Source of the DNA: Schmidtea nova | Lineage: Eukaryota | Assembly: GCA_044892505.1 (NCBI GenBank) | Contig: CM097882.1 | Span: 184,202,001 to 184,266,000, forward strand | Length of the DNA: 64,000 nt | Direction: 5' to 3' | In this document: piece after piece, positions 12,634 through 36,839 of the stretch | How positions within the stretch are numbered: the first letter of the stretch is position 1 | How the letters are laid out: each line of letters begins with the position of its first letter | Made by a program: the position numbers and the translations under genes | Notes under the pieces: generated by a model | Database searches by the model: none | Seen by the model: only the letters and a program-made list of their open reading frames with translations | Told to the model about the DNA's origin: nothing

Positions 12634-13554
12634 GCAGTTTTCTCATTAATAAATATGTTATCAAAATTATCTTTTTGTTTCACCTTTGATCTCTTTTTAT
12701 ATCAATGATTCCCATAATGGTATGACTATAGATCGAAGGTTTTTTAACAAGTACACAATATTTCGGCACAGCCTTTATTAAGAGTGTATTTCAATATGTT
12801 AATAATTTTTTTATTTAAGGTTTCTTAATTACTTGAACTAATAAAATACTAGAAAAATGTTATAAATGGCTTTTAGTTTAAAATTTTAAGCATAATGGTC
12901 CGCCAAACATATAAACAAAAAGAATGACACACACGTGCCGAGAAATTGGACAGCACTGATATAGGTGTTGGGCTAAATCTAAAATTAGTTTTGTTGAAGC
13001 GGTAACACAGCATGTAGAGAGCACGCAAGAAGTAAATTTAAAATTTGTTATGAGAAACACCAATTAAACAAAGTAATAATAGAACACATCAAAATAATTA
13101 AATGAAACACGTTTAAAGATTGAACTAAACAAATAGCATCATATACACGTTTGTAGATTTTCAATCAAAAATCAACTACAAGTAAGAAACATGCATTTAA
13201 AAGCGTGTTTTACTCGTTATTTGAATCTGAAATGAAGTGATCACATGTCATTGTGACGTTCATGTATATAAAACAAATAATGGATAATTCGGGTTCAAAT
13301 TATGAAAATTACTTTCAATGGTCAGTACAGGTATATTATTTTTATTTAATTATATTATTAATATTATTTAAGATTATTCAAAGTGAAATATGCCCCTGGG
13401 TTCAAAAAATGGACAATGGCAAAAACTAATAGACTTGGCTGAAAACAGTAAGACTTTTACGAAAACTAAAGAAAGATTTTAAAATATATTGAAGATAACA
13501 ATTGGACTCTGTAACATTTATGTTATTGTAAATTTAATTTATCGAAAATAAATG

Positions 13555-14387
13555 TGTTGGGTTATTGGTGTTAAGTCGGTAGTTTCTGACTCCGGTGTTC
13601 TCTTTCAATTACAAAATAAACAAGACCCAACACAATAACTTTCTTTATTTGTCAATTGATCACAACTCTTTTTATCACAAAAAGTTACGCCGGTTCTGCA
13701 CTCTTCGCGTGAGGGTAGAACACCCAATGGGATATCTCCCTCTCTGACACGCAATAGATTAAGTATAAACTCTACTTTTGATTTTCTTTCGACGTCTCCT
13801 TCAAATGTCTTCTAACGATTTGCTTCACGTTGCCTACTTTTATTCTTCAATCGGTTGGCCTCGAAACTTTGACTTTGACCACATGGCGATATCGGCAATT
13901 TGCTCTCCGTTTATATACTATTTTTTTGTTGTCATCCTGTCGGCTTAATTGGATCTGGAGAAAATGAGATAATTAAATTTGTTTGACCGCCGCCTAATTG
14001 AGTTTCGCCGCTAATGGTTTTTCGTCTCTTCCCGGGGCATTAAATTTATTTCGATAATTAAATGATTTTGTTGATGCCCCGGGTTTCCCATAAGCTCGGG
14101 TTTCCCATTGGCTCGGGTTTTCCATTAGACGATTAATTATTTTTTAATTAATTTGTATTTTCTTAATTTATCTTTCTGGGGGTCCCATTTCAATTTTATA
14201 TACCCATATTTGAATTCGTCTCATCATTTGGCATCTTCCCATACCAGTTTCCCCCGCTCAAACTTTATTTTAATTTTTTTAATTAATTTTAAATTAATCT
14301 TTGAACATTAATTATTTTTAAAATTTTGTATTTTTATTGATTTGTGCAATTACAAATATAGTTTCTGTGATTTTCACAACCCCAACA
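13555..14387 (-). repeat. 3' LTR of element 1
   Basis: Direct repeat of 29365-30197. I noticed only one substitution by eye (14358 vs 30168). Confidence 0.96.
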
Positions 14388-14400
14388 TATCTCCCCTTTA
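14388..14400 (-). promoter_or_regulatory. Polypurine tract of element 1
   Basis: Minus strand TAAAGGGGAGATA abuts the TG start of the 3' LTR. Confidence 0.85.
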
Positions 14401-14718
14401 TTTTAAAGATTCGTCCTCGAATCTACATATACACATATTTTGATCATACATCCTGACAAGGATCATATAAAATTAATAGTGATGAAAATATCCCCACTAA
14501 TTGTAATAATAAGGATAATAATAATAATTACAATAATACTGGTGGTAATGACAATGACGTAAGTATAATAATGATGATGATAATAGTATCAGTAGTACCC
14601 ACCATACTGATAATAATGATAGTACTGATGTTTATAATAGTGATAATAACATTAGCAATATACTGATATTAATAATGATGATGATAACAACAATCCTGAT
14701 AATAATATCAACAATAGT

Positions 14719-14719
14719 G

Positions 14720-14804
<85 letters not shown>

Positions 14805-14907
14805 CACTGATAACGATGACAGTACTAATGATAGTACTAATCTTAATAATAATAGCCATACTAATACTAACGATCAATAATAATGATTATCAATATTAAT
14901 ATTACTG

Positions 14908-14972
<65 letters not shown>
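14719..14972. repeat. (AAT)n microsatellite tracts inside element 1
   Basis: Two long AAT runs. They explain the poly-Ile pseudo-ORFs. Confidence 0.95.
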
Positions 14973-14973
<1 letters not shown>

Positions 14974-15374
14974 TTAACTCATTTAATATTTCATACTAAA
15001 ATTGTTTATTAAATCGAAAAATGTTAAAAATTATTAAATCGAAAAATATTTAAGTATATTTAAGAAAAATATTTAAGTTTTCCCAATTTACCATTTTGTC
15101 AAATTGACAATTAAAAATTTTCAGAATCAGCTTGGAAGATAATTCGATTTGGTCCAACTCAATTATCTCCCAGAATTTCCCTCCGCAAGATGAGAGAGAG
15201 CGCCGCGAATATAAGCGGCGGCGCTCCACATTTTTATCAGAAATGTCATTACTCGGTGAGCTATTTTTTTTTTATTTTTAAAATTTATTTTATATATTTA
15301 TTTATTTACATATTTATATTTTATATATATTTGCTTTATATATTTATATTTATACATTCACATATAATATATAC

Positions 15375-16909
15375 NNNNNNNNNNNNNNNNNNNNNNNNNN
15401 NNNNNNNNNNNNNNNNNNNNNNNNNNNNNNNNNNNNNNNNNNNNNNNNNNNNNNNNNNNNNNNNNNNNNNNNNNNNNNNNNNNNNNNNNNNNNNNNNNNN
15501 NNNNNAAAAATTGTGTATTATTGATTGGCTTAAATACGAATGCGCATACCAAATGAACCAATATGTCTACTTTTCTACAATTGTGAGTGTGAGTTTAATC
15601 GCATTGAAAGATAAACTAGCTAAATGAAAAATTATTTTATTTATCGAATATTGATTTAATTTCAGAAATATTTAAGTTTTGGCATTACATAATATTCAAA
15701 TTTTCCAAATGTAATGAATTTTGAAACTTAAAAATTCAAATTTACTTTGACATTCTTCAATTATTTTTTTGTAAAAGTTATTACGTTGAAAATATTCAAG
15801 TGGGTTGGCCTAGCGAGTTAGCCAACAACTGGTCAGTATTTACACCGTATACCGATGACCAACATCTCTTATATTGACAGAATAATTGATTTTTGCTGTA
15901 AATCCATTAATAATTTTTTAGAAAATCCTCTTATTTGCCTAGTTTTTAATATCAATGATACTTTAAAGATAGATAATATGTCGGTGTATGGGGAAAATTC
16001 CCATCGAAAGGCAAAAATCGTGTGTTGGTGCGTGTCGACTAAGCAGGATCTGACCTTAGACAGATTTGCCTTAACCAGCTGACTAATATATGTGCAGAGG
16101 GTCTCGATAAATCTTTAATAAACTATTATTGGAAAAATTAATTATTGAAAAATTAACAATACTATCAATTAACAACAACAATAACAATGATAATAATAAT
16201 AATAATAACTGGCAACCCTCAATCGCTGTCCAGGAGAGTATGATCCCGGTGATTAAGGGCTGTTGGTTTTTATTTAGATNNNNNNNNNNNNNNNNNNNNN
16301 NNNNNNNNNNNNNNNNNNNNNNNNNNNNNNNNNNNNNNNNNNNNNNNNNNNNNNNNNNNNNNNNNNNNNNNNNNNNNNNNNNNNNNNNNNNNNNNNNNNN
16401 NNNNNNNNNNNNNNNNNNATGATAATAGAGTGATATTCTATAATGTGATCACAATGTTGATGAATTTAATAATAACTGCCTTCGCCTTATGCTTTTATGA
16501 TATTTATGATCATTTCATTTTATTATTATTTTATTTTGTTTTATTTATTTATTTATTTATTTTTTGCCAATGTTTGTTTTATTGATTCCATCATCCCTTT
16601 GACGATATAATACCAATAATAATCTGATTAATAACTGTAATATAATAATTGACAACTTTCAATCACTGCTTAGGGAGATTGATTTTTTGTTTTTATTTCG
16701 TCCTGAATTTTAATCATTGTATATAATACTTATAAGGATCGAAATTTTCTTTTGATATCGCACTTATAGTGTTCGTANNNNNNNNNNNNNNNNNNNNNNN
16801 NNNNNNNNNNNNNNNNNNNNNNNNNNNNNNNNNNNNNNNNNNNNNNNNNNNNNNNNNNNNNNNNNNNNNNNNNNNNNNNNNNNNNNNNNNNNNNNNNNNN
16901 NNNNNNNNN
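15375..16909. other. Three assembly gaps (15375-15505, 16280-16418, 16778-16909) inside element 1
   Basis: N runs. Confidence 1.
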
Positions 16910-17127
16910 TGTCCAGGAGAGTACACCCCCGGTGATTAAAGGTTGTTGGTTTTTAATTAGCTTCCGAATTTTTATTTATTCAATTCTTTTCTTTGTGTTT
17001 TATTTATTTATTAAAAAAATTTTTTTTTTGTTGTTGTGGGGGTTTGACCGGTGGGCGCCATTTTAACGAACTGAGACAGAATTACTAAATTTATTTATAA
17101 ATAATCACATATATAATTAATATAATT

Positions 17128-18396
17128 TTAGTTCATTTTGATTTCCAGCCGCTTTGCCCCATTTCGATATCTGATAATTGTTTCTTCTTTTTCATACACC
17201 ACCCCGTTGATGGTCATTGTTTCCCCGACGTCGACGTTGGATGCTGAAGCTTTCCTTTTGCGATCTTCCTTTTGTTCCATTGGGCCATATTCCATCGATA
17301 ATTGGATTCTTGTTAATTTTGTGGATTCCATCCATTCGCAATTCTCTTCAATCTCCTCTAAATACATTTCAGTTGCCCATTTCAACTTTTGATTACTCTT
17401 TTCTGTTCCTGTATCTATTTCATCCACTTCCATGTTTGCCTCGTCTACGACCATTATCGTTCTTTCTGATCTGGGAATTTCAGATATCGATTCCATATGT
17501 TGCCTAGTTTTATACTCTTGCAATGAATACTTTTTTGATGGCCCTATCTTAGGCATTGATATATCATCGATCCAAAGGTTTTCTAGTCCCAAATATATCT
17601 TCCGAATGCTTTTGACGTCCTCTAAAGCTGAGTGAATACCCATTTGCATCTCTTCTCCATAGAGTTCCTTCATTATGGTTTTGAGCTTATACCATTCCCT
17701 TCTTCTTGTCACTCCTTTCAATTGCAACGCTTGAGCAGTAGCTAGATCCCGTATGCCATAAAGATGATTTACCCATATCCCTAGGAATTGTAATTCTGCA
17801 TGTAAGTCATGTCTTACGAGTATTTTCCCGATTGTCAGTTTTTGGATTTCCTTTATCTCTTCGTACTGGTCTTTTTGGTTTCGGCTCGCCACCTCCGTTA
17901 TTCCATGGATGTTTGAATTGAAATGTTTGAGTCTTCCTCTAGGTGTTAAGAAGACATTTTTCACAATTTTCCCGTGATAGTTCATAATGGCCACCGCCAA
18001 GGGCATCATCTTTCCAGTCATGCTGGTTCCATATTCGGCATCAATGAACAATATTTTGTTCCGAATTTCTTCTATACCCATTTCCTTCCGAATAAACGAC
18101 AATTTTCTTTTTAACATTTCCTTTGTTATTTGTAGGAGTTCAAGATTTTCTTTCTGCATTGGCTCCTCGCTGGGTACATCATCAATTTCGTTTTTGATCC
18201 TTGTTTCCACTACAATTGTGGCATCCTCGTTTGCTGCTCGTAATATTTTCCCGATTGCTGGCTCCTTGATTTTCCATGACGAAAGTTTTTTGATCTCCCA
18301 CCATATTTGATCATTTTCGTCTAGAATTTCCACCGTCCCTCTGATGACGTGGATATAGTATTCGTCTTTATCTGATATTTTTAGTTCCTTTGTCAT
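17128..18396 (-). CDS. DEDDh 3'-5' exonuclease (REX4/ISG20-like), accessory ORF of element 1, 422 aa
   Basis: ExoI ILFIDAEYG, ExoII KILVRHDLHAEL (Glu at the usual Asp position), ExoIII HSALED. Lies between the LTRs. Confidence 0.85.
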   Translation of the reverse strand: MTKELKISDKDEYYIHVIRGTVEILDENDQIWWEIKKLSSWKIKEPAIGKILRAANEDATIVVETRIKNEIDDVPSEEPMQKENLELLQITKEMLKRKLSFIRKEMGIEEIRNKILFIDAEYGTSMTGKMMPLAVAIMNYHGKIVKNVFLTPRGRLKHFNSNIHGITEVASRNQKDQYEEIKEIQKLTIGKILVRHDLHAELQFLGIWVNHLYGIRDLATAQALQLKGVTRRREWYKLKTIMKELYGEEMQMGIHSALEDVKSIRKIYLGLENLWIDDISMPKIGPSKKYSLQEYKTRQHMESISEIPRSERTIMVVDEANMEVDEIDTGTEKSNQKLKWATEMYLEEIEENCEWMESTKLTRIQLSMEYGPMEQKEDRKRKASASNVDVGETMTINGVVYEKEETIIRYRNGAKRLEIKMN

Positions 18397-18972
18397 TTAA
18401 AATTTTGATTTTCTGTCTATAGTGAATACTTGGACTTTCATTTTTCTGTCGTCCAACCTTAGATAATTTGGGATTTGCAAATTGTTGACTATCTGGAATC
18501 TTCTTTGGCCGGCATGATTTCTCATCATCTTCAGATAGCTGTCGTACGTTTCTCTGGCCCATTGTATCTGCTCCATTTCTTACTAAAACGATTATAATTT
18601 AAATTTGAATTAATTTAATTTTGACGCTAGGACTAAGATGGAGTACCCAAAGGATACTGTCTTAGTTGGTAGCGGTATAAATAAAAATATAAAATTACCG
18701 ATTTAATTGAAGTTTTCTTAGTTATTTGAAATTTTACTTTTGTTTAAGATTAATTTAAATTTTATGATGTCTAAGTTTACCTTATATACCCCCCTTTTGA
18801 TTTTTCTATCCTTTTTTCTACCCCCTCACTCTTTTAGTATTAGCCAATCAAATCATTTTCCCACTTTCCCATGCCGAAGAGTGCAGATTCACATGAAACA
18901 ATTATAAAAGAAAATGTCACTAGATACTAAACTATTAATCTACCATAATTGCATGCAAATAATTGTATCTCA

Positions 18973-21900: not shown

Positions 21901-24900
21901 TGCATCAGTCATCAGTATAAATGGTTTTTTGAAGTTCGGACATCTCAATATTGGTTGTTTAATAAGACTCTCTTTTAATTTATCAAATGCTTCTTGTTGA
22001 GCTGTTGCCCATTTGAATTTAGTCTGCTTTTTTAGCAACATGTTTAAAGGTTGTGCTACATGCGAAAAATTCCTTATGAATTTCCTATAATAGCTCGCTA
22101 ATCCAAGAAATTGTCGGACTTGGTCCGCATCTTTGGGGATCGGATACTTTTTGATCTTTTCCACATTTTCTGATTTTGGTTGTAACCCTCTCCGTGAAAT
22201 TATGTGCCCTACGTAAACAACTTCTGATTTTCCCCATTCACATTTTGAAGGTTTTATTTTTAAATTGGCTTCTATTAGTCGTTTAAACACTATTTCCACA
22301 TCTTTTAAGTGTCCCTGAAAATTGTTTGAAAATATTATTATATCATCAATATAGACTAATGCATGTGGTATATCACGCAAAACAAAATTCATACCTCTCT
22401 GGAATGTAGCTGGTGCTCCCGTTAGACCGAATGGAAGCACATTAAACTCATATAGTCCTTTCCCATCTGAAAATGCCGTTTTTCTCCTGTCTTCCTCTTT
22501 GACTTTAAATTGGTTATATCCTTTGTTAAGATCGATTACTGTGAAGAATTGTACTTCTCCCATCTGATCAAACATTTCTTGAGGAACTGGTATAGGATAT
22601 GTGTCTTTTCTTGTCACTTGGTTTAATTTCCGATAATCAACACAAAATCGTAATTCACCGTCCTTCTTTTTCACTACCACTATTGACGATGAGAATGGTG
22701 ATGAACTATCTCTTATTATTTTGAATTCCTTCATGGCTTTAATTTGCCGATCGCTTTCTTCTTGATGTATATATGGAATTCTGTACGGTCGTATTTTTAT
22801 AGGAGTTTCATCAAGCAATGGTATTTCGTGTTCAATTATCTGAGTGAGTCCTAGATCATACTCATGTTTCGCGAATGCATTTTTATACCTTTTCAATAAT
22901 GCCGCAAATTCTTGTCTTTGTGCCTCTGTTAGATCATCACTTGTCACTTGTGGTTCTTTATAGATTTTGATATTTCTAGGTAGTTTTTGCACTTCTTCCC
23001 CTTTCAATTTTGACAGTTTTCCCAACTTTGTTTTGGGTTTCATCTGAACAGATTTTGTGCTACAATTAGCTATTCTTACTGGCACGGTTTTGTCTTTAAT
23101 TTTTACTATTTCGTCACACATAGGTACGTCGTACTTTTCTATTAGTTTTTGATTTGGTTCGAATATACACTCTTCTTCGGAAACATTTTCTACATTAGCG
23201 TAGTATATCACTTCGCTTTTTGGTGGTACTTCCAACGTTTGATTTAAAAAGACCTCTCCTGCTTCATGCACTACCTCATCAGTCTGCCTTTTTATTAATT
23301 TGCCCGTCTTTAAGTCCAGTGAGATTCCTTGTAATTGTTCCATGATATCCATGCCAATCAAACATTTGACAGGGCTTTTTCTCATTACTGATACCCAATG
23401 GATTACTTCCTGATTTCCTATATTCAACTTTACTTCTAGTTTTCCAATAATATTTAATACGTTATGCGTCATTGATTTAATAATTTTTGTTGTTGGCTTT
23501 ATTTTCGCTTTTTCCTGTCTCGTTAAGAAACTCTCCGATACTATACTGTGACTCGAGCCTGAATCCAATAACGCTTCCACTTTTCTTTCATTAAACTGTA
23601 TGGATATTCTAGGTTGTTTTCCTCCAATTTCTATTGTCATCAATGCGTAACTACATGGTAACTCAAGCATGTTCTTTCTTTCAATTTCGGCGCTTGATGG
23701 CTCAATCTTCTCTAGTTCGATTTTAATCTCATCAACTGGCTTCATTTCTCTCAACTTTTCACTTGGGTATATTGGAGCTGTTGGTATTAATGTCGGTGTA
23801 TACCATTTAGAAAGAGTGTCAATTCCTGTTAATTTTGGCATTGGTTCAAGCAAGAACCTGGTTTCGGGTTCTATTCTACTTTTCATTATGCTCCTTCGAA
23901 AATTATTTTGCTCTGATCTGCCGCCACCGTTCTCATTATCAGGACCATTATTTTTATCCTCATGATCGCATAGTGATTCTTCGCTTTTTTGATCATTTCT
24001 CAATTGCGCCCGTACATTTGCCATTTCTTTGTATTGATGACTTGTAATGAAGAATCTAGCCAAAAATGGAATACAACCAATTATCATTTTCCATGACCAT
24101 CCGGAAATTGTATATATCCTGTGAGTGGACAATACTTGTGATATTATCACCTTTACCGTTACTGCAATTACATAAATACCAATTAAACCTGCACAGGCTT
24201 GTCCCAAAAACATAAATTTTCCCCAAATCTTTTCCATTGTTTTGTAAGTAGCTCGTTTAAAATGATCAGGTGTCAGCAAGTATTCGTAGTTGACTTTCCC
24301 TTCTCCATTCGGCAATATGGTATCAATCATTTCTGAAATCACGCGTTCCTTTTTTGACGGAAATAACAAATTTCTTTGGGCTTCTTCGATGTCTTCGCTC
24401 GCATATAAACCCATTTGTGCCATTTTATTCATTGATGTAAAATTTATTAAGTATTCCAAATTCGTCAATTCCAATTTATCTGGTGTTCTTACTCCTCGGT
24501 AATCTGGTAGCGCTATCCATGAATCTTGTGCTAAGCGATATAATGGAGCTAATAATCGATTACATTGCAAAGTTTTTGGTTTAACTTGTTCCTCCAGCAG
24601 TATTCGGGTTATCGGTTCCATAAATCGTAGTTTCCCGCCAACACTTACTGGCAATTCATTTGTACATTTCTCATATTTTGCGATTTTCACTGTAATTTCT
24701 TTGCATCGGTAACTGTACAGCGCTTCTCCAAAGATTCTAGCAAATACACCATTTTCTGAAATTAGCATGGGTGCTACTAAATTCGGGTTTGTAACCGCCA
24801 TCGCCATTCGATTTCGAAGTATTTCTTTATTCAATTTACAATCGTTCAAGATCATTTCTCTATATATGTTCTCCATGGTATTTTGGCTAAAATGAAATAA

Positions 24901-27900
24901 ATAATCAATTTTATTATTAAAATAATGAGTTAGTTTTATATCATCCCTGTGAATTCTCGTCTTCGCTTCATGTACAGTCGTTTTTGCCACATATACTCCT
25001 TTGTAATTTGTTACATAGACTGTTTGACCACATTTGCTCGTAATCTCCTTTTTAATAAAGCGCATGCTGTCCGTTGGCAAGGTTGACATTAAAACCGTCG
25101 CTGTTTGTCTTGTCCACAGTGGAGTTGACCTTACTGTGCCATTTTGTTTATAATTCATATTAAAGTTGTCTGGTCTCTCCCTAAATTGCTCTCCGGTTAA
25201 CTCTTTGAAATTCATTGTTTTCAAATGACCCAGGTTACATATATTGGTTTTAACATCGTAAACGAGGATTGACTCTCCCGTGTGACAACTAGTTTGCTTC
25301 ATATTACAAAATGGGTGAGTTTGTAGTTTTCCGGTATCATCATCAAAAGATCCTTCGAACATTCTCAATTCGGTTAAGTATTCCTCTATTACCACTGTGT
25401 GTTTAATTATTTTCTCATTTATTTTATACGGTTCACCTTCACAGTCACCGTCTGATTTCATCACTCCCTTCACCACTAATGTTTCTCGAATTTGATGATT
25501 TAATTTCGCTTTTAATCGAATTTCAGGGCTGATTTTTAATTCCCCCGTTTGGAAGGCTGTTAAGCAATTTTCCGGCAATACATCCACCGGTCGTGGAATG
25601 GCGTGCATTTTGATTAATGACGTATGGCTCCATTTACCACAGAAGAATACAAAAGTGGTTCGTTTTACAATGCATTCTCTAACTTTGGTACGCCGTAAAT
25701 CTGACTCTTGATACACATGGTATTTTACTTCGTTTTCAATCTTTAATTTTCGAGGGTATGCGTCTGGGCACTCTGACATATCAACCACTGAGTAAATTTT
25801 CCCCATTTCGGTTTGTGAACAATCGTATGCCACCAATGACGTCGTTTGTGCAATAACTGCACATAGAATAATCATCATGAACATTATCCAAGGGAATATC
25901 ATCGTCTTCCTTAGTTTTAGACTTACTCTTCCGTTTAATTGCCTTTGCGGTGAATCATTTTCCGGTTTCTTTCTTTTCTTTATTATTGATAAATTTAATG
26001 TTTTCCACCCTCCACGCTCTCTCAGCCAATTAATTAAAGACTCATTTATTAGTCGAGCCGCAATGTCAATTAAATTATCAAGCTTGTCTGACTTTGTAAA
26101 TGCATGAATACCGATCTCTGAAACAACGTAGGTTAGAATTATTAGCACTACTTCTTTATCGATCCCATTTTCGATCAACTTTTCTATTACTTCACAGTTA
26201 CAAAAGCTATCCTCTTTGCCCAATTTCCGCACTACTCCTGGAAGTCTGATTTTCACTTCATCTACTATTCCTTTCAATTCCTCTTCCGTTTCTGTCTCTA
26301 TTTTTAGAATTGGGTATACGACTCCAACCAAATTTCTTATTACGTCACTTGTTTCTTCAACTTCCTGCTCTAATTTTACTAAGGTTTTCTTCATCTCATA
26401 CAATGTTCTAGTCTTCGTATTCGCACTTTTTATTTCACCTTTTTCGATATTCGTATCTTCAATAACTGCCATTTCTGCTGTCTGAGCATTATTATTAACC
26501 CTCTTTTCACCATTATAACCATCAGTAACTATTTCAATTTCGCTTTCCTTTATTTCTTCTGTTTGCTCATCTGTGTCTGAAAATTCAACTTTGTCAAGCA
26601 TCCTCGAATTATATTCTTTATTTGCGATTATGCGATTTATCAAATACCCCTGACTTCCATTAGTACTTAAATACCCATATTCATCCAGTTCCTGTGGCAC
26701 ACATCCGCAGTCATATAAATATTCATCGTCATCCAATTCTTCCCCTTTATATCTCAGCACTATAATTCCATCTTTACCTAACATTTCCGCAGCTCTTTTA
26801 CGCACTTTTCGAACTTTCGTACACCAGTGTTCCTCTACATACTCAGTTTTCCCAATATCTTCATATTCTATTGCAATTGTTAACGAATTTAACTCAACTC
26901 TATCTTTTCTAAGCTCTTTACCCAATTTTCTCATTATTCTCTTTAAACATTGTCTATATCCCGTTCTTCTAAACAAATAGGGTCGTATCGCATTAGCAAG
27001 TTCTAATTTTTCCTTTTGCCCAAATTCAGATTCCTCTATTAATTTTACTATTTCTTTAATTTCGTTTTCGTCACCAATACATAAAACATCATTTAGCTCC
27101 TTTACTATTTGCATCGGATCACTTCTTGTCATTTCACTGTTACTCATCATACTGGCTATTTGTAATTCATTTTTGTTCCCTGGTATAAGACCACAATCTA
27201 TTAAATATTCATCATTTTCTAAATCTCTATTTTTAAACTTTAATTCGACTACCCAGCCTTCACATTTCTCTCTTAGTCTCCTTTTTAAATCTTTTACGCG
27301 ATCATAGGCTTCACAACGACAAGTAATCACATTTTTATCATTTTCATTAACAACATCAATAGAAATAAAATCTAACCATTTATTTTCTCGAAACGCTTTC
27401 CCAAATTTTCTCATCAATTCTTTAATTTCTTCTCTATTTGTTACATTTATTTGATAATAATTAGCACACAAATTAATCGCGCCTTTCAATTTTCTCATAC
27501 TTAACGACATTTGACTCAGGCTTTTAACCGATACCAATATTTTAGATGATTCTTCCACGCTAGCTTCTAGTAATTTCTCAAGTCTTTTCATCATCATGGA
27601 AGCCTTTTCGCTTTCCAAATCGTCTTTTGTACACCCAGTTGTCGTGGCAGCTTCTGTCATGTCTTGCTGCGATCCATACATCATGTGATTATCCAATTCA
27701 TCATCAGATTCAAACTTGGACATTAAACGATCTAAACGTCGACCCATTTCTTTCACTTGGTTTTCAATCTTTTCATTGAAATCATCTGATTGAACAAAAG
27801 CCACGTTGTCTGTCTGCAGTTTATCATTTTGAAATCTTATTGATTTTTTCAATATAGGTTTCTGAAATTTGTCGACATTCCTCGGGCATGATCTAGCCAT

Positions 27901-29088
27901 GTGTCCATATCCTCTACATGAATGACATTGAATTTGACCTTGAAGGTTCACTCTATCTCTTTGTGGGGATGGCGAAGTTGATGGAGACCTCGATCTAGCA
28001 AAACAATTCCGAGAGACATGTCCTTTCCTTCCACAATTGTAACATTGCACATTATCGTTATTACGCTGATCGTTAAAATTTAGTTTATTAAAACTTTTCT
28101 CACCATTACCCTTCAACCAATCTGGCCACATTCGTTTTGGGCTTCGTTGAACGTTGTTTTTAGACCAGCATTGATTGATGTTATGTCCCATCCTTTGACA
28201 ATAATCACACTGAATTGGAGTTGGACTTTTTGGAGATCTATTTTTGAACCAACATTGATTAACATGATGTCCTATTCGTTGGCAATGGCTGCATTGAATT
28301 GGCCTCTCTTTTTCATCAATTTGAACATTTGTTGATTTATTTGGCTCAAATCTTTGTCTAAACGTTGGTGATGGACTAATTGATTGCTGAAGCCGATTGT
28401 TTCTGACTGGAGTTATGGACCGTTCTCTGGGTTCATTGATGATGGCAAACGATTCTGATTTTGGCTGTGAACTTTTCAGATTTAACTCAATTTTCATCGC
28501 CTTTTTGATTAACTCATCAAAGTTATTGAAGTCCACATAACATAATGCCTTTTTGATCTCCTTTTTGACTCCCGTTAAGAACTGGTCTTGTAGCAATTCT
28601 TTCACCTGCTTTGCCACTTCAATCTGTTCCGGCTTTACTTCGAATGCTTTCTCTGCAAGAGTAGTCAAGTGGTACGCAAATTCACTTACCGATTCCTCTG
28701 ATTTTTGCACTCGATTATAGAACTTCTGCCGCATTATCCGTTTTATATCCCCTCCAATTAGTTTCGCGGCTAAGGCATCTTTCAATTTCGTCCAGTCATT
28801 CGCAATTGTTCTTTTGTCAATTTGTTGCCAGGCTTCTCTCGCTGCTCCCTTTAGATATAGTGGCAATCTTTGCACCATTGTCGCTTGGCTCCATCCATAG
28901 GCTGTAGCGTACATGTAGTAATCCGCCATAAAATCAACGAATTCCCCTGGATCGCCTCCATACTGATTTACTGGCAGTTTCTGGCAGCTAGCATAGTCAT
29001 TGCCATTGCCGTTGCTGGTGGACATGTGCGTATCATCCTGATTGTTTGTATTACTCATTTTTGTTTCTGGTTGTTTATTACTTCTCAA
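18973..29088 (-). CDS. Single polyprotein: Gag(4 CCHC)-Ubl-Ubl-Bcl2-like-glycoprotein-PR-RT-RNaseH-IN-membrane tail (first ATG 29058)
   Basis: Uninterrupted 3371 codons. Four CX2CX4HX4C knuckles (about 27885-28295), LLDSGS, FCVDYRKLN, YIDDII, TDAS, HHCC, DIVGP/DQGTNF/ERFNGT and GPY. Internal signal peptide followed by AYDC. Confidence 0.93.
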   Translation of the reverse strand: MRSNKQPETKMSNTNNQDDTHMSTSNGNGNDYASCQKLPVNQYGGDPGEFVDFMADYYMYATAYGWSQATMVQRLPLYLKGAAREAWQQIDKRTIANDWTKLKDALAAKLIGGDIKRIMRQKFYNRVQKSEESVSEFAYHLTTLAEKAFEVKPEQIEVAKQVKELLQDQFLTGVKKEIKKALCYVDFNNFDELIKKAMKIELNLKSSQPKSESFAIINEPRERSITPVRNNRLQQSISPSPTFRQRFEPNKSTNVQIDEKERPIQCSHCQRIGHHVNQCWFKNRSPKSPTPIQCDYCQRMGHNINQCWSKNNVQRSPKRMWPDWLKGNGEKSFNKLNFNDQRNNDNVQCYNCGRKGHVSRNCFARSRSPSTSPSPQRDRVNLQGQIQCHSCRGYGHMARSCPRNVDKFQKPILKKSIRFQNDKLQTDNVAFVQSDDFNEKIENQVKEMGRRLDRLMSKFESDDELDNHMMYGSQQDMTEAATTTGCTKDDLESEKASMMMKRLEKLLEASVEESSKILVSVKSLSQMSLSMRKLKGAINLCANYYQINVTNREEIKELMRKFGKAFRENKWLDFISIDVVNENDKNVITCRCEAYDRVKDLKRRLREKCEGWVVELKFKNRDLENDEYLIDCGLIPGNKNELQIASMMSNSEMTRSDPMQIVKELNDVLCIGDENEIKEIVKLIEESEFGQKEKLELANAIRPYLFRRTGYRQCLKRIMRKLGKELRKDRVELNSLTIAIEYEDIGKTEYVEEHWCTKVRKVRKRAAEMLGKDGIIVLRYKGEELDDDEYLYDCGCVPQELDEYGYLSTNGSQGYLINRIIANKEYNSRMLDKVEFSDTDEQTEEIKESEIEIVTDGYNGEKRVNNNAQTAEMAVIEDTNIEKGEIKSANTKTRTLYEMKKTLVKLEQEVEETSDVIRNLVGVVYPILKIETETEEELKGIVDEVKIRLPGVVRKLGKEDSFCNCEVIEKLIENGIDKEVVLIILTYVVSEIGIHAFTKSDKLDNLIDIAARLINESLINWLRERGGWKTLNLSIIKKRKKPENDSPQRQLNGRVSLKLRKTMIFPWIMFMMIILCAVIAQTTSLVAYDCSQTEMGKIYSVVDMSECPDAYPRKLKIENEVKYHVYQESDLRRTKVRECIVKRTTFVFFCGKWSHTSLIKMHAIPRPVDVLPENCLTAFQTGELKISPEIRLKAKLNHQIRETLVVKGVMKSDGDCEGEPYKINEKIIKHTVVIEEYLTELRMFEGSFDDDTGKLQTHPFCNMKQTSCHTGESILVYDVKTNICNLGHLKTMNFKELTGEQFRERPDNFNMNYKQNGTVRSTPLWTRQTATVLMSTLPTDSMRFIKKEITSKCGQTVYVTNYKGVYVAKTTVHEAKTRIHRDDIKLTHYFNNKIDYLFHFSQNTMENIYREMILNDCKLNKEILRNRMAMAVTNPNLVAPMLISENGVFARIFGEALYSYRCKEITVKIAKYEKCTNELPVSVGGKLRFMEPITRILLEEQVKPKTLQCNRLLAPLYRLAQDSWIALPDYRGVRTPDKLELTNLEYLINFTSMNKMAQMGLYASEDIEEAQRNLLFPSKKERVISEMIDTILPNGEGKVNYEYLLTPDHFKRATYKTMEKIWGKFMFLGQACAGLIGIYVIAVTVKVIISQVLSTHRIYTISGWSWKMIIGCIPFLARFFITSHQYKEMANVRAQLRNDQKSEESLCDHEDKNNGPDNENGGGRSEQNNFRRSIMKSRIEPETRFLLEPMPKLTGIDTLSKWYTPTLIPTAPIYPSEKLREMKPVDEIKIELEKIEPSSAEIERKNMLELPCSYALMTIEIGGKQPRISIQFNERKVEALLDSGSSHSIVSESFLTRQEKAKIKPTTKIIKSMTHNVLNIIGKLEVKLNIGNQEVIHWVSVMRKSPVKCLIGMDIMEQLQGISLDLKTGKLIKRQTDEVVHEAGEVFLNQTLEVPPKSEVIYYANVENVSEEECIFEPNQKLIEKYDVPMCDEIVKIKDKTVPVRIANCSTKSVQMKPKTKLGKLSKLKGEEVQKLPRNIKIYKEPQVTSDDLTEAQRQEFAALLKRYKNAFAKHEYDLGLTQIIEHEIPLLDETPIKIRPYRIPYIHQEESDRQIKAMKEFKIIRDSSSPFSSSIVVVKKKDGELRFCVDYRKLNQVTRKDTYPIPVPQEMFDQMGEVQFFTVIDLNKGYNQFKVKEEDRRKTAFSDGKGLYEFNVLPFGLTGAPATFQRGMNFVLRDIPHALVYIDDIIIFSNNFQGHLKDVEIVFKRLIEANLKIKPSKCEWGKSEVVYVGHIISRRGLQPKSENVEKIKKYPIPKDADQVRQFLGLASYYRKFIRNFSHVAQPLNMLLKKQTKFKWATAQQEAFDKLKESLIKQPILRCPNFKKPFILMTDASNFALGAVLGQQVEGEKDHVIAYASRSLKPHEKNYSTIEKEIKTNFRQYFVGRKFIVFTDHNPLQWLMKHRDSASKLIRWSIALQEYDFEIKYRTGKSNGNADAMSRIPEENIIQNEVNYENTIFMAIKTANNMKELQGDQENDVELNQLRKHAVTIKRESDWKHIAEEKHKYVLHEGLLKCVKNENVLIVVPAKHRTALLLLYHDGALGGHLSARKTLSRLKQKYYWDTIEQDVRQWCHTCEVCLTRRNTGRKIKVPLKPMTVPVAPMEMTAMDIVGPLPETTNGNKYIIVFCDYLTKWPEAYAMQNQKAETVAKIFVENIIFRYGAPRKLLTDQGTNFQSELFKSITELFGILKLNTSPYHPQTDGLVERFNGTLINMISSYVNRKQKDWDLFIKPCLFAYRNAVNESTGETPFYLMYLRRNNMPIDLKFQPPISQYMEVSDYKVVMQERLQSVWVKAGLKIRHNQEAYKECYDKRAHAHDIKVGDLVYINKPEPTKGLSTKLQRPFKGPYLVCDTTETNLKLRPQNNKKAGTIVIHVNRCKKVPLEERYPLRSKPSNGEKEKVIKQKFTKNPTQLNYLSKTLLITTVMMINILCASAIRTFPAYAMKKVPLLEKIDVYSTCTQIVWIYYCEATEEIEINNLLNYFEPPVKLNYNKNTHVARELAMNYKYPWIITRVNLKDNLTRVHDLIRVNVWTKRLQDRVSIEPVINGINVYWNSHESQQVKTVFQNHAIDTLNSRKPFIKYVNLKLFQMYNIQIQYFEKSLYENGTDSTDQWVLIHSSQHTINLINETNRVIFHVYNQTINVTRQTYPNQRAVLYYCGKVQGILENRKESKILSFRQLRSKSNSKIVLIKIKYYRRAKYSNLWQLTLVEDKFVRVSYTEMDSYPQKLNQSTRITTAHIKVLNPSNKTISASPTENEFLCVRLLITIIIITIFVIILISVIIFEIRKAERHSTNQSEAPRPWIDYEETFV

Positions 29089-29340
29089 TTCGTAATATGT
29101 TCGGTTTGGTACAACTTTTTCTCTTCTAAATTTTAATATATCAATTATAAATTTTACCTTTTATTTTAATTTCAACAGTATAAATCTTTCCACAATTATC
29201 AACAAACTTTTATCAATCCTTGATTCGATTTACTGACTTTTTTCTTTTAATCAATTTCACAATTTCCAAACTTTTTAGCAACTTTTAATTTCTTTTTGCC
29301 AATAAATATTCGATTTCTTTTTGCAACGCTTCACCGACTT

Positions 29341-29360
29341 TGATCTCGTCGGGCTCACCA
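29341..29360 (-). promoter_or_regulatory. Primer binding site of element 1 (tRNA-Trp-like)
   Basis: TGGTGAGCCCGACGAGATCA, 4 nt inside the 5' LTR. It is complementary to a tRNA 3' end; the Trp identity is inferred. Confidence 0.75.
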
Positions 29361-29364
29361 AATA

Positions 29365-30197
29365 TGTTGGGTTATTGGTGTTAAGTCGGTAGTTTCTGAC
29401 TCCGGTGTTCTCTTTCAATTACAAAATAAACAAGACCCAACACAATAACTTTCTTTATTTGTCAATTGATCACAACTCTTTTTATCACAAAAAGTTACGC
29501 CGGTTCTGCACTCTTCGCGTGAGGGTAGAACACCCAATGGGATATCTCCCTCTCTGACACGCAATAGATTAAGTATAAACTCTACTTTTGATTTTCTTTC
29601 GACGTCTCCTTCAAATGTCTTCTAACGATTTGCTTCACGTTGCCTACTTTTATTCTTCAATCGGTTGGCCTCGAAACTTTGACTTTGACCACATGGCGAT
29701 ATCGGCAATTTGCTCTCCGTTTATATACTATTTTTTTGTTGTCATCCTGTCGGCTTAATTGGATCTGGAGAAAATGAGATAATTAAATTTGTTTGACCGC
29801 CGCCTAATTGAGTTTCGCCGCTAATGGTTTTTCGTCTCTTCCCGGGGCATTAAATTTATTTCGATAATTAAATGATTTTGTTGATGCCCCGGGTTTCCCA
29901 TAAGCTCGGGTTTCCCATTGGCTCGGGTTTTCCATTAGACGATTAATTATTTTTTAATTAATTTGTATTTTCTTAATTTATCTTTCTGGGGGTCCCATTT
30001 CAATTTTATATACCCATATTTGAATTCGTCTCATCATTTGGCATCTTCCCATACCAGTTTCCCCCGCTCAAACTTTATTTTAATTTTTTTAATTAATTTT
30101 AAATTAATCTTTGAACATTAATTATTTTTAAAATTTTGTATTTTTATTGATTTGTGCAATTACAAATTTAGTTTCTGTGATTTTCACAACCCCAACA
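29365..30197 (-). repeat. 5' LTR of element 1
   Basis: Near-identical to 13555-14387. Confidence 0.96.
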
Positions 30198-36700: not shown

Positions 36701-36789
36701 GTTTTGTTGGCACTTTTATACATAGAATGGGGCAGTAGTGAGATCACCGAGCCGGTGTCTATTAAAAATTCTATGTTGTTGCTGTGCAC
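33721..36789 (-). pseudogene. pol (PR-RT-RH-IN) of element 2 with one in-frame TGA at 34897-34899
   Basis: LIDTGS, CGDYRMLN, YLDDIL, TDCS, HDISHPG..CKDC, HIDIVGP, TDQGRQFES, GPF. The reading frame continues past the TGA. Confidence 0.9.
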
Positions 36790-36839
36790 CCAAAATGTGT
36801 TGTTTTTGTCACCTGATGTGGGTGCTATAATTGGTGACT

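What the first reader, a model, noticed from the sequence alone, without database searches (positions are those of the whole stretch)
13555..30197. Giant, apparently intact Gypsy-type element with a virus-like cargo set
Seen: 16.6 kb, near-identical LTRs, 4-bp TSD, PBS and PPT, one unbroken 3371-codon ORF, and a second 422-aa ORF. Besides Gag and Pol it appears to carry a fusion glycoprotein, a Bcl-2-like segment, two ubiquitin-like segments, a second membrane protein and an exonuclease. Known env-bearing LTR elements (errantiviruses, Cer, Tas, BEL/Pao with chuvirus G) normally place env after pol, and I know of none with this set. Inference: a possibly undescribed infectious metavirus lineage with entry, anti-apoptosis and nucleic-acid-trimming modules.
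Basis: partly seen in the sequence, partly recalled or inferred. Interest (0 to 1): 0.93.

Follow-up and report, generated by a model that had tools for sequence, protein, structure and literature searches.

The report
Compact Burro-like gypsy endogenous retrovirus
This is a young, almost undamaged 16.6-kb retrovirus-like mobile element that packs a viral entry protein and several host-like add-ons into one giant gene, but the same design is already published for the 'Burro' elements of planarian flatworms, so it is a new member of a known kind.

Summary
On the minus strand lie two 833-bp LTRs that differ at 2 positions, with TG..CA ends, a 4-bp duplication (AATG), a PBS and a PPT. There is one unbroken 3371-codon ORF (3361 aa from the first ATG) and a 422-aa second ORF. 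The three N gaps sit in the non-coding stretch between ORF2 and the 3' LTR, so they break no gene.

Most modules are supported:
- Monjiviricetes-type fusion glycoprotein between gag and pol: Pfam E 8e-88.
- Two ubiquitin-fold domains: AlphaFold model plus Foldseek.
- ISG20-like DEDDh exonuclease ORF, conserved downstream of pol in 6 of 6 relatives.
- A second signal-plus-anchor membrane protein after integrase.
- The Bcl-2-like domain is probable, not proven: profile E about 5e-4, below Pfam's cut-off, and no confident fold.

The 'undescribed lineage' reading fails. Arkhipova & Yushenova 2019 (PMC6431247) describe the planarian Burro/GYPSM1 polyprotein as Gag, SUMO-like, BCL2-like, in-frame mononegavirus-like env, then PR-RT-RH-IN. 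Gag-env-pol gypsy elements are also reported from nematodes, flatworms and bryozoans (PMC13524379).

This is therefore a compact Burro-like element, probably from a dugesiid planarian (28% GC). The exonuclease ORF and the second membrane protein may be unreported details. Infectivity and anti-apoptotic activity are not shown.

The parts
13551..13554 (.). Target-site duplication, left copy (AATG)
   Evidence: Same 4 bases at 30198-30201, directly outside the LTR ends.
13555..14387 (-). 3' LTR, 833 bp, TG..CA
   Evidence: Self-BLAST: 2 mismatches against 29365-30197; ends read.
14388..17127 (-). 3' non-coding stretch. It holds the PPT (14390-14399), an (AAT)n array (14666-14977) and the three N gaps (15375-15505, 16280-16418, 16778-16909).
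   Evidence: No ORF of 150 aa or more. Tandem repeats. No protein similarity to relatives' ORFs. GC 0.23.
17128..18396 (-). ORF2, 422 aa: DEDDh 3'-5' exonuclease of the RNase T / ISG20 kind
   Evidence: Pfam PF00929, 30.1 bits against a cut-off of 24. Best PDB matches are ISG20L2 (E 1.5e-6) and ISG20. Homologous ORFs follow pol in L001-L005 and L009. Catalytic columns read D-E-E-H-D.
18973..29058 (-). ORF1, one unbroken polyprotein: 3361 aa from the first ATG, 3371 codons from the TTG at 29088
   Evidence: domain hits. It has one in-frame 6-residue deletion in the RNase H domain relative to relatives and no stops or frameshifts.
27679..29058 (-). Gag: capsid-like domain (28624-28863) and four CCHC zinc knuckles (27886-28293)
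   Evidence: PF03732, E 7e-7, and PF00098. The pattern scan found 4 knuckles.
27133..27372 (-). Ubiquitin-like domain 1
   Evidence: Internal repeat of UBL2. Weak Pfam hit to Rad60-SLD/SUMO-like PF11976, E 0.0015.
26650..26886 (-). Ubiquitin-like domain 2
   Evidence: Module conserved in P0001-P0007. AlphaFold model on alignment A1 has pLDDT 67.8. Foldseek PDB top 50 are all ubiquitin-fold entries (natural ubiquitin, ISG15, SUMO, NEDD8, UBL domains and engineered ubiquitin variants), prob 1.0, target-normalised TM 0.73-0.86 for single-domain entries. There is no C-terminal Gly-Gly.
25984..26316 (-). Bcl-2-like helical domain (probable)
   Evidence: PF00452, E 3e-4 to 6e-3, covering 93-94 of 100 model positions but below the cut-off. 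Single-sequence PDB hits: Bax 0.003-0.007, then Bok, Bak, Bcl-xL. The same module sits before the glycoprotein signal in P0027, P0028 and P0031. A 3-sequence profile gives Bcl-xL/Bax/Bcl-2 at E 5e-4 to 1e-3. The fold is not confirmed: pLDDT 47.
23947..25908 (-). Fusion glycoprotein: signal-like hydrophobic segment 25825-25908, ectodomain 24217-25824 (14 Cys), membrane anchor 24127-24216, conserved start of the tail
   Evidence: PF24664 Monjiviricetes_fusion, E 8.2e-88, model positions 5-632 of 653. Hydrophobic segments. 36-42% identical to the relatives' glycoproteins, with 100+ invariant columns.
23326..23619 (-). Aspartic protease
   Evidence: PF00077 and PF13975; D-S-G motif present.
22198..22674 (-). 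Reverse transcriptase
   Evidence: PF00078, E 3.6e-31; Y-I-D-D present.
21640..22011 (-). RNase H domain, with one private in-frame 6-residue deletion
   Evidence: PF17917 and PF17919; deletion counted against 11 relatives.
20314..21327 (-). Integrase: H2C2 zinc finger, DDE core, GPY/F tail
   Evidence: PF17921 and PF00665; motifs.
18976..20154 (-). C-terminal type-I-like membrane protein fused after integrase: signal-like segment 20089-20154, ectodomain 19129-20088 with 7 N-x-S/T sites, anchor 19054-19128, 26-aa tail
   Evidence: Hydropathy and sequon scan. No homologue in Pfam, PDB, the relatives or 5.8 billion proteins. Nine of 10 relatives have the same signal-plus-anchor pair after pol.
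29342..29360 (-). Primer-binding site (TGG plus 16 nt), 4 nt after the 5' LTR
   Evidence: Read. No tRNA gene in the window to match it against.
29365..30197 (-). 5' LTR, 833 bp
30198..30201 (.). Target-site duplication, right copy (AATG)

Best explanation
This is a recently inserted, coding-competent-looking copy of a Ty3/gypsy (Metaviridae-type) endogenous retrovirus. It belongs to the 'gag-env-pol in one frame' lineage whose published type is Burro/GYPSM1 of dugesiid planarians. It is a compact version: 16.6 kb and a 3361-aa polyprotein, against more than 30 kb and 4873 aa for Burro1.

Shown by sequence:
- The LTR, TSD, PBS and PPT set.
- One ORF reading Gag (capsid-like domain plus 4 zinc knuckles), two ubiquitin-fold domains, a Bcl-2-like domain, a signal segment, a Monjiviricetes-type fusion glycoprotein, a membrane anchor, PR, RT, RNase H, IN, a second signal segment, a glycosylated ectodomain and a second anchor.
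- A separate ISG20-like DEDDh exonuclease ORF.

Inferred from established LTR-retroelement biology: transcription from the 5' LTR, tRNA-primed minus-strand synthesis at the PBS, plus-strand priming at the PPT, and integration that makes the 4-bp duplication.

Inferred from hydropathy only: the polyprotein is threaded through the ER membrane.
- Gag, the UBL domains and the Bcl-2-like domain stay cytosolic.
- The hydrophobic segment about 35 residues after the Bcl-2-like domain serves as an internal signal for the glycoprotein. After signal-peptidase cleavage it would also serve as a Bcl-2-style tail anchor.
- PR-RT-RH-IN return to the cytosol, and the last roughly 390 residues form a second surface glycoprotein.
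- Cleavage would be shared between the host signal peptidase and the element's protease.

Most likely roles, all with low confidence. The glycoprotein mediates membrane fusion for cell-to-cell or animal-to-animal transfer. The UBL and Bcl-2-like domains interfere with host ubiquitin and cell-death control. The exonuclease trims RNA or DNA 3' ends, either during replication or to blunt host nucleic-acid-based defence.
For: Structure. Domains.

Independent assemblies show the same module order, so it is not an assembly accident. P0001-P0010, P0012 and P0014 (2.1-4.0 kaa) carry PF24664 together with PR-like domains, RT, RH and IN. BLAST maps their glycoprotein upstream of pol, and most also show a Gag N-terminus. 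P0011, P0013 and P0015 match pol only.

Module evidence:
- UBL fold.
- Bcl-2-like domain.
- Exonuclease ORF in 6 of 6 relatives whose contig runs past pol, with catalytic residues kept.
- Signal-plus-anchor pair after pol in 9 of 10 relatives.

Older related LTR copies at 30665-31464 and 41111-41872 (75-81% identity) show the family has been resident in this genome.

Published Burro architecture with the same order SUMO-like, BCL2, in-frame env, PR: PMC6431247. The Burro host genome is more than 70% A/T (PMC11410931), and the window is 23-39% GC in 2-kb windows, about 0.30 overall.
Against: - No Burro, GYPSM1 or other Repbase sequence could be fetched, so kinship to Burro rests on architecture and on one shared weak Pfam family (PF11976), not on a direct alignment or an RT tree.
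- The MATH, BIR, ankyrin and dUTPase motifs reported for Burro were not found in this copy, and it is half Burro's size.
- The host species was not identified.
- The Bcl-2 hits are all below Pfam's curated cut-off. An exhaustive phmmer search of 1.84 billion representatives found no significant homologue. The single-sequence model was too poor to test the fold.
- The membrane topology, the processing scheme and every proposed function are untested.
- RNase H carries a private 6-residue deletion, so this copy may not be fully competent.
Confidence: 0.8

Rival explanations
1. One reading: an undescribed, infectious metavirus lineage with a cargo set and gene order unknown among LTR elements.
For: The glycoprotein is complete (PF24664 positions 5-632 of 653). 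The LTRs are nearly identical and both ORFs are open. None of the relatives found carries a name from any source. In the literature I could search, the exonuclease ORF and the post-integrase membrane protein are not mentioned for Burro.
Against: The same order (Gag, SUMO-like, BCL2-like, in-frame env, PR-RT-RH-IN) is published for Burro/GYPSM1. GAG-ENV-POL gypsy elements are published for three phyla. No relative was found in 2.9 million IMG/VR viral contigs, so nothing points to free virions. Diverged LTR copies nearby show long residence in the genome.
Confidence: 0.08
2. This is a purely germline or stem-cell intracellular retrotransposon. The glycoprotein, the second membrane protein and the host-like domains are inherited baggage that no longer serves transmission between cells.
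For: There is no evidence of virions. The C-terminal membrane protein has no detectable homologue and evolves very fast. The RNase H deletion suggests this copy may already be decaying.
Against: The glycoprotein keeps more than 100 invariant columns, including a conserved cysteine set, across relatives only 36-42% identical. The exonuclease keeps its catalytic residues at about 30% identity. The signal-plus-anchor pair after pol persists in 9 of 10 relatives despite sequence turnover. This pattern fits purifying selection on membrane functions.
Confidence: 0.25
3. The 'Bcl-2-like' segment is only a generic helical region whose resemblance to Bcl-2 proteins is chance.
For: All Pfam scores are below the curated cut-off. 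The top PDB hits are designed helical repeat proteins. No homologues appeared in the exhaustive search. The model has pLDDT 47 and the fold search was meaningless. Six relatives show no Bcl-2 hit before the glycoprotein.
Against: Three related sequences (this element, P0027 and P0031) each hit PF00452. A 3-sequence profile lifts Bcl-xL, Bax and Bcl-2 to E 5e-4 to 1e-3; 57 of the 60 PDB sequences listed (131 matched at E<=1) belong to that family. HMMER aligns an 8-of-10 identical stretch to the C-terminal (BH2) end of Bax. A hydrophobic anchor follows at the distance typical of Bcl-2 proteins. A BCL2-like motif is reported at this position in Burro.
Confidence: 0.15
4. The giant ORF is an assembly chimera.
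For: The assembly has gaps inside the element.
Against: All gaps lie outside both ORFs. The LTR pair and the TSD bracket the whole unit. The same module order recurs in independent ENA and JGI contigs.
Confidence: 0.02

Closest known systems
Burro / GYPSM1 giant gypsy-like LTR retrotransposons of dugesiid planarians (Jurka 2007; Grohme et al. 2018; annotated in Arkhipova & Yushenova 2019, PMC6431247)
   Same: One giant ORF. It has an N-terminal Gag with retrotrans_gag and several CCHC knuckles, a SUMO/ubiquitin-like domain (PF11976), a BCL2-like motif, and an in-frame env between gag and pol with hits to mononegavirus fusion glycoproteins. PR-RT-RH-IN and accessory ORFs follow. The host genome is AT-rich.
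   Different: This element is half the size: 16.6 kb and 3361 aa against more than 30 kb and 4873 aa. No MATH_TRAF_C, BIR, ankyrin, AIR1, Smc or dUTPase hit was found in this copy. It has two UBL domains. The ISG20-like exonuclease ORF and the post-integrase membrane protein are not mentioned in the Burro description I could read. No direct sequence comparison was possible.
Non-canonical GAG-ENV-POL Ty3/gypsy 'errantiviruses' of Nematoda, Platyhelminthes and Bryozoa (Sacco et al. 2022, J Gen Virol 103:001739; Chary & Hayashi 2026, PMC13524379)
   Same: A Ty3/gypsy pol, with env placed between gag and pol. The env is an RNA-virus-derived, class III (gB-like) type glycoprotein. Multi-copy and recently active elements are reported.
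   Different: Those reports do not mention UBL, Bcl-2-like or exonuclease modules, or a single all-in-one ORF: term searches of PMC13524379 gave 0 hits. Whether this family is in their data set could not be checked, because no supplements are held.
Mosquito BEL/Pao elements with a Chuviridae-like glycoprotein (Dezordi et al. 2020, PMC7642597)
   Same: Capture of a Monjiviricetes-type glycoprotein by an LTR retroelement.
   Different: Those elements have a BEL/Pao pol and env after pol. Here the Pfam hits are the Ty3/gypsy-type set (RT_RNaseH_2, Integrase_H2C2, GPY/F), and env comes before pol.
Bdelloid rotifer Juno/Vesta LTR elements with an exonuclease ORF3 (Rodriguez, Kenefick & Arkhipova 2017, PMC5408684)
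   Same: An extra ORF downstream of pol encoding a DnaQ-superfamily 3'-5' exonuclease with catalytic residues kept.
   Different: The rotifer ORF3 is the DEDDy, RNase D-like type. Here it is the DEDDh, RNase T/ISG20-like type.
Insect errantiviruses (gypsy, ZAM, Idefix)
   Same: Ty3/gypsy elements with an envelope gene, LTRs, a PBS and a 4-bp TSD.
   Different: Their env is a separate ORF after pol and is F-type, related to baculovirus F. They carry no host-like cargo domains.

Membership tests
Ty3/gypsy LTR retroelement (Metaviridae) | Long terminal repeats with TG..CA ends, and a 4-6 bp target-site duplication | tested here: met
   833-bp LTRs with 2 mismatches; TG..CA ends; AATG duplication.
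Ty3/gypsy LTR retroelement (Metaviridae) | PBS next to the 5' LTR and a polypurine tract next to the 3' LTR | tested here: met
   TGG-initiated 19-nt PBS 4 nt after the LTR; AAAGGGGAGA ending 2 nt before the 3' LTR. The matching tRNA was not identified.
Ty3/gypsy LTR retroelement (Metaviridae) | Pol domain order PR-RT-RNase H-IN, with integrase last | tested here: met
   Pfam hits, in ORF1 residues numbered from the TTG: PR 1824-1921, RT 2139-2297, RH 2360-2483, IN 2588-2774.
Ty3/gypsy LTR retroelement (Metaviridae) | RT/IN phylogeny places it inside Ty3/gypsy | not testable with these tools
   No GyDB or Repbase reference sequences can be fetched. The only indirect support is the gypsy-type Pfam families RT_RNaseH_2 and Integrase_H2C2, a GPY motif, and the absence of BEL/Pao families.
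Burro / GYPSM1-like planarian elements | Single polyprotein with the order Gag, SUMO-like, BCL2-like, in-frame mononegavirus-like env, PR-RT-RH-IN | tested here: met
   Order read; published order in PMC6431247.
Burro / GYPSM1-like planarian elements | Giant size: internal region up to 25 kb, total above 30 kb | tested here: not met
   16.6 kb in total and 15.0 kb internal, although three gaps of estimated length lie inside.
Burro / GYPSM1-like planarian elements | MATH_TRAF_C, BIR, ankyrin and dUTPase-like motifs | tested here: not met
   None at E <= 0.1 in this copy. Ankyrin repeats do occur in relatives P0011, P0013, L006 and L007.
Burro / GYPSM1-like planarian elements | Sequence homology to Burro1-4 / GYPSM1, and a dugesiid planarian host | not testable with these tools
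   No reference sequence is available and the host is unidentified. The window's GC of 23-39% fits the more than 70% A/T of Schmidtea.
Gag-env-pol 'non-canonical' gypsy ERVs | Env-like glycoprotein gene between gag and pol | tested here: met
   PF24664 at ORF1 residues 1069-1714, between Gag (up to about 470) and PR (from 1824).
Insect errantivirus | Separate env ORF downstream of pol, of the F type | tested here: not met
   Env is upstream of pol, in frame, and of the Monjiviricetes type.
BEL/Pao element with chuvirus G | BEL/Pao-type pol (Pfam Peptidase_A17, DUF1758/1759) | tested here: not met
   No such family among the significant hits. DUF1759 appears only as noise at E 0.034, inside the Bcl-2-like piece.
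Monjiviricetes fusion glycoprotein (PF24664) | Full-length match above the curated cut-off, with a signal segment and a C-terminal anchor | tested here: met
   295 bits against a cut-off of 27, model positions 5-632 of 653. Hydrophobic segments at residues 1061-1088 and 1625-1654. No solved structure matches by sequence, so the fold class rests on the literature (PMC13524379).
Ubiquitin-like (beta-grasp) domain | Beta-grasp fold | tested here: met
   Model pLDDT 67.8. The Foldseek PDB top 50 are all ubiquitin-fold entries: natural ubiquitin, ISG15, SUMO, NEDD8, UBL domains and engineered ubiquitin variants. Prob 1.0, query-normalised TM 0.64-0.75.
Ubiquitin-like (beta-grasp) domain | C-terminal Gly-Gly for conjugation or cleavage by deubiquitinases | tested here: not met
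   No Gly-Gly after either domain, in this element or in the relatives.
Bcl-2 family | Significant match to the Bcl-2 domain, including the BH1-BH2 region | tested here: inconclusive
   PF00452 at 17.5-21.8 bits against a cut-off of 31.4. Profile against PDB: E 5e-4 for Bcl-xL and 5.9e-4 for Bax. Strong local match to the BH2 end of Bax.
Bcl-2 family | Helical-bundle fold around a central hydrophobic hairpin | tested here: inconclusive
   The single-sequence model is all-helical with 7 helices, but pLDDT is 47 and Foldseek found nothing at E < 0.2.
DEDDh exonuclease (RNase T / ISG20 kind) | Pfam match above the cut-off, and the five catalytic residues | tested here: met
   PF00929 at 30.1 bits against 24. 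ISG20L2 and ISG20 are the best PDB hits. The catalytic columns read D, E, E (Asp in most relatives), H, D.

The most novel reading that the evidence does not exclude
The Burro-like lineage is a still-circulating flatworm retrovirus group. Its whole proteome is made as one ER-threaded polyprotein, topologically like a flavivirus polyprotein. It carries two surface glycoproteins and a tail-anchored Bcl-2-like regulator that shares its anchor with the glycoprotein signal. It also has a conserved ISG20-like exonuclease gene, in some members paired with a catalytically dead copy, that acts against host nucleic-acid-based defence. On this reading the compact 16.6-kb form would be the minimal, near-complete gene set of the group, and the exonuclease and the second glycoprotein would be previously unreported core genes.
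Probability: 0.2. Interest if true: 0.65.

Novelty: new member of a known kind. Interest (0 to 1): 0.33.

Why it matters
The main value is as a correction. The striking gene order and the apoptosis and ubiquitin cargo are genuine, but they are already on record for planarian Burro elements, so the finding should not be ranked as a new virus lineage.

Three things are still of use:
- This is a compact, nearly undamaged copy that shows which modules are the constant core of the lineage.
- The DEDDh exonuclease ORF follows pol in 6 of 6 relatives examined, and a second signal-plus-anchor membrane protein follows integrase in 9 of 10. Neither appears in the Burro description I could read.
- The layout predicts a membrane-threaded retroelement polyprotein, which expression and proteome data could check.

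Tried and rejected
Host and exact-copy look-ups. ORF1, ORF2 and a neighbouring ORF are not on record, so the host was not identified. There are no tRNA or Rfam hits in the window.

Bcl-2-like segment:
- The exhaustive phmmer search gave only one hit at E 4.8e-4 to a repetitive protein, which I judge spurious.
- The single-sequence AlphaFold model had pLDDT 47, and its Foldseek search was meaningless, as the tool warns.
- Scans of IMG/VR and JGI metagenomes with this segment found nothing.
- Six relatives show no Bcl-2 hit upstream of the glycoprotein.

C-terminal membrane protein: nothing in Pfam, PDB, the relatives or the 5.8-billion-protein search.

Glycoprotein: no PDB sequence match. The alignment-based IMG/VR scan found none. 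The JGI scan found only two loci, both in one sample.

Families considered and rejected:
- Troyka (PMC12440569): it has CG..CG ends and a 3-bp TSD, which this element lacks.
- BEL/Pao with chuvirus G, and insect errantiviruses: see the membership test.

Papers that could not be read: Grohme et al. 2018 and Sacco et al. 2022 are not held, and the supplements of PMC13524379 are not held.

An LTR or R-repeat test on relatives' contigs gave only a 34-nt repeat in L002, which I left uninterpreted.

Its place is not given in my notes, my script output or this report. The consensus lines that the alignment tool printed by itself were not used.


Full report
OBSERVATION. The element lies on the minus strand. 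Self-comparison gives two terminal repeats, 13555-14387 and 29365-30197, of 833 bp with 2 mismatches and no indels. Both start TG and end CA, and the four bases AATG flank the unit on both sides at 13551-13554 and 30198-30201. Read in the element's sense, a TGG-initiated 19-nt primer-binding site (29342-29360) starts 4 nt after the 5' LTR. The purine run AAAGGGGAGA (14390-14399) ends 2 nt before the 3' LTR. Only two ORFs of 150 aa or more exist in the interval. One is 18973-29088(-), 3371 codons from a TTG; the first ATG at 29058 gives 3361 aa. The other is 17128-18396(-), 422 aa.

The three N gaps the scan flagged (15375-15505, 16280-16418, 16778-16909) were checked first. All lie in the 2.74-kb AT-rich, microsatellite-rich stretch between the ORF2 stop and the PPT. 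That stretch has no long ORF and no protein similarity to the relatives' ORFs. The gaps therefore interrupt no gene and the in-frame question does not arise. They do make the element's length, and the content of its 3' region, an estimate. I did not fill them.

WHAT THE POLYPROTEIN HOLDS. Residues here are numbered from the TTG. Pfam gives:
- Retrotrans_gag at 76-155, with four CCHC knuckles at 266-401.
- Monjiviricetes_fusion (PF24664) at 1069-1714, E 8.2e-88, covering 5-632 of 653 model positions.
- Aspartic protease at 1824-1921, RT at 2139-2297, RNase H at 2360-2483, and integrase zinc finger plus core at 2588-2774.
- A GPY motif further on.

Hydropathy shows a signal-like segment at 1061-1088 just before the glycoprotein and a membrane anchor at 1625-1654. 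A moderately hydrophobic segment lies at about 2979-3000, and a very hydrophobic anchor lies within 3316-3349 (core about 3321-3345), 26 residues before the C-terminus. The stretch between the last two carries 7 of the protein's 25 N-x-S/T sites.

UBIQUITIN-LIKE SEGMENTS. The two segments are internal repeats of each other. They form a module of about 55 residues present once or twice in seven relatives. An AlphaFold model built on an 8-sequence alignment of the module (A1) has pLDDT 67.8 and a beta-beta-alpha-beta pattern. Every one of the top 50 Foldseek PDB hits is a ubiquitin-fold entry: natural ubiquitin, ISG15, SUMO, NEDD8, UBL domains or an engineered ubiquitin variant, at probability 1.0. 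Pfam gives weak hits to Rad60-SLD/SUMO-like (PF11976, E 0.0015) and to ubiquitin (E 0.1). Neither domain ends in Gly-Gly.

BCL-2-LIKE SEGMENT. This is the weakest claim.
- Pfam PF00452 matches 93-94 of 100 model positions, but at 17.5-21.8 bits against a cut-off of 31.4.
- Against PDB sequences the natural-protein hits are Bax (E 0.003-0.007), Bok, Bak, Bcl-xL and Bcl-2. All align on the same part of the query, and HMMER aligns an 8-of-10 identical run to the C-terminal BH2 end of Bax. The top-ranked hits, however, are designed helical repeats.
- An exhaustive search of 1.84 billion representatives found no real homologue. The single-sequence model was too poor (pLDDT 47) for a fold test.
- Support came from relatives found through the glycoprotein search. 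P0027, P0028 and P0031 carry an alignable module directly upstream of their glycoprotein signal segment. P0027 and P0031 each hit PF00452 on their own (E 1e-3 and 0.055).
- A 3-sequence profile (A2) raises Bcl-xL, Bax and Bcl-2 to E 5e-4 to 1e-3. Of the 60 PDB sequences listed (131 matched at E<=1), 57 belong to that family.

I rate the domain as probably real, at about 0.8. It gives no indication whether it promotes or inhibits cell death.

EXONUCLEASE. ORF2 passes Pfam's cut-off for RNase_T and is closest to ISG20L2 and ISG20 among solved structures. A homologous ORF follows pol in all six relatives whose contig extends far enough: L001, L002, L003, L004, L005 and L009. In an alignment the catalytic columns read D-E-D/E-H-D in the main copies. 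L002 and L005 carry a second, tandem paralogue that has lost these residues.

C-TERMINAL MEMBRANE PROTEIN. It has no homologue anywhere I could search. Even so, 9 of 10 relatives also end in a signal-like segment plus an anchor after pol. The feature is thus an architectural constant with very fast sequence turnover.

INTEGRITY. Neither ORF has a stop or a frameshift. The PR (D-S-G), RT (Y-I-D-D) and IN (HHCC, DDE) motifs are present. Against 11 relatives the only private indel of 4 residues or more between PR and IN is one in-frame 6-residue deletion in the RNase H domain. 'Apparently intact' is therefore right, with one caveat. Two differences in 833 bp between the LTRs mean a young insertion. 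The absolute age depends on a substitution rate I do not know.

RELATIVES AND CONTEXT. Twelve unnamed polyproteins of 2.1-4.0 kaa from ENA and JGI assemblies (P0001-P0010, P0012, P0014) carry PF24664 together with PR-like domains, RT, RH and IN. Three more (P0011, P0013, P0015) match pol only. BLAST places the glycoprotein upstream of pol in these relatives, and most also show a Gag N-terminus. Identity is 47-51% in pol for the closest ten and 26-40% in the glycoprotein. Some have two or three protease-like copies or ankyrin repeats. This recurrence, together with the LTR/TSD frame and the gap positions, rules out an assembly chimera. In the window, diverged copies of the same LTR family (75-81% identity) lie at 30665-31464 and 41111-41872. 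No relative was found in IMG/VR, and only two were found in JGI metagenomes, both in one sample.

COMPARISON WITH WHAT IS KNOWN. Arkhipova & Yushenova 2019 (PMC6431247) describe the planarian Burro1/GYPSM1 polyprotein. It has Gag with retrotrans_gag and three CCHC knuckles and a MATH_TRAF_C motif. [quoted passage not shown] A BCL2-like motif follows, and 'between BCL2 and PR' there is an env region with multiple hits to mononegavirus fusion glycoproteins. [quoted passage not shown] The polyprotein also has dUTPase, BIR and ankyrin motifs, and the element carries accessory ORFs. The order UBL, Bcl-2-like, env, PR is exactly what is seen here.

Chary & Hayashi 2026 (PMC13524379) report GAG-ENV-POL gypsy elements with class III-type env in Nematoda, Platyhelminthes and Bryozoa. 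They cite Sacco et al. 2022 for capture of an RNA-virus glycoprotein by a nematode metavirus. Exonuclease ORFs downstream of pol are known from rotifer Juno/Vesta, but of the DEDDy type (PMC5408684). The Schmidtea genome is more than 70% A/T (PMC11410931), and the window is 23-39% GC in 2-kb windows.

I could not fetch any Burro sequence, the Grohme 2018 paper or Repbase. Kinship to Burro therefore rests on architecture, not on alignment. The element fails the 'giant' criterion and lacks several Burro motifs.

MECHANISM (inference). The replication cycle is that of any LTR retroelement. The unusual part is expression. With no stop or frameshift between gag, env and pol, and with two internal signal-like segments each followed by an anchor, the simplest reading is a polyprotein threaded through the ER membrane. 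Gag, the UBLs and the Bcl-2-like domain would lie on the cytosolic side. The glycoprotein ectodomain would be luminal and PR-RT-RH-IN cytosolic again. A second luminal glycoprotein would come at the end. The hydrophobic segment about 35 residues after the Bcl-2-like domain could then serve both as the glycoprotein's signal and as a Bcl-2-style tail anchor. Spliced subgenomic RNAs are an untested alternative. The functions of the UBLs, the Bcl-2-like domain and the exonuclease are not shown. Their conservation argues for use, not for a particular role.

VERDICT. This is a new, compact member of the known Burro-like gag-env-pol gypsy lineage, not a new lineage. Possibly unreported details are the conserved DEDDh exonuclease ORF (with a dead paralogue in some members), the constant post-integrase membrane protein and the implied membrane-threaded polyprotein.

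Noticed in passing
window 30665-31464 and 41111-41872: Diverged copies (75-81% identity) of the same LTR family, in the opposite orientation. The first lies only about 470 bp from the element's 5' LTR. They are probably solo LTRs or remnants of older relatives.
   Followed up: partly
window 33721-37970 (-): A second, different Ty3/gypsy element, 31% identical in pol. It is split into three ORFs: a gag-like ORF of 376 aa with DUF7041, a PR-RT-RH ORF of 630 aa, and an IN ORF of 343 aa. Its gag-pol region is therefore interrupted at least twice.
   Followed up: partly
window 50664-51944 (+): Fragments of another gypsy-type pol (RNase H and integrase pieces, 25-43% identity).
   Followed up: no
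window 674-2005 (+) and 11702-12319 (-): A 443-aa ORF with a weak Endonuclease VII domain, and a 205-aa ORF with an IS1595/ISXO2-like DDE transposase domain. The window is transposon-rich, and no clear host gene was seen.
   Followed up: no
L002 12408-13970 and L005 13786-14979: Two relatives carry a second, tandem exonuclease-like ORF that has lost all the catalytic residues (A, R, Q and W/E in their place), next to an intact copy.
   Followed up: partly
P0002, P0006, L009 and others: Relatives carry two or three retropepsin-like domains: after the glycoprotein, before RT and after integrase. The window element has only one.
   Followed up: partly
L006 17034-24564: The contig holding relative P0004 also carries bacterial-looking genes (Bac_luciferase, NAD_binding, MnhB) at 45% GC. 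It may be a chimeric metagenome contig.
   Followed up: no
P0030 (370 aa, metaclust): A gene model fuses a mitochondrial ribosomal protein L47 domain to a glycoprotein N-terminus that is 75% identical to this element's. It is the closest relative seen and is probably a mis-joined gene model from the same or a sister species.
   Followed up: partly
L002 5-38 and 16744-16777: A 34-nt exact repeat containing a TATA-like string lies near both ends of a 16.8-kb contig named NODE_1, presumably the longest contig of its assembly. It may be an LTR or R boundary, or an assembly artefact.
   Followed up: partly
window 25954-26301 (-): The top PDB sequence hits of the Bcl-2-like segment are de novo designed helical repeat proteins (E down to 1e-9, summed over repeats). 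This is a reminder that idealised helices can outscore true relatives.
   Followed up: yes
window 22675-23325 (-): The roughly 200-residue stretch between PR and RT has no Pfam hit here. Burro is reported to have a dUTPase-like motif at this position.
   Followed up: no
window 47027-47272: A fourth assembly gap of 246 N lies outside the element.
   Followed up: no
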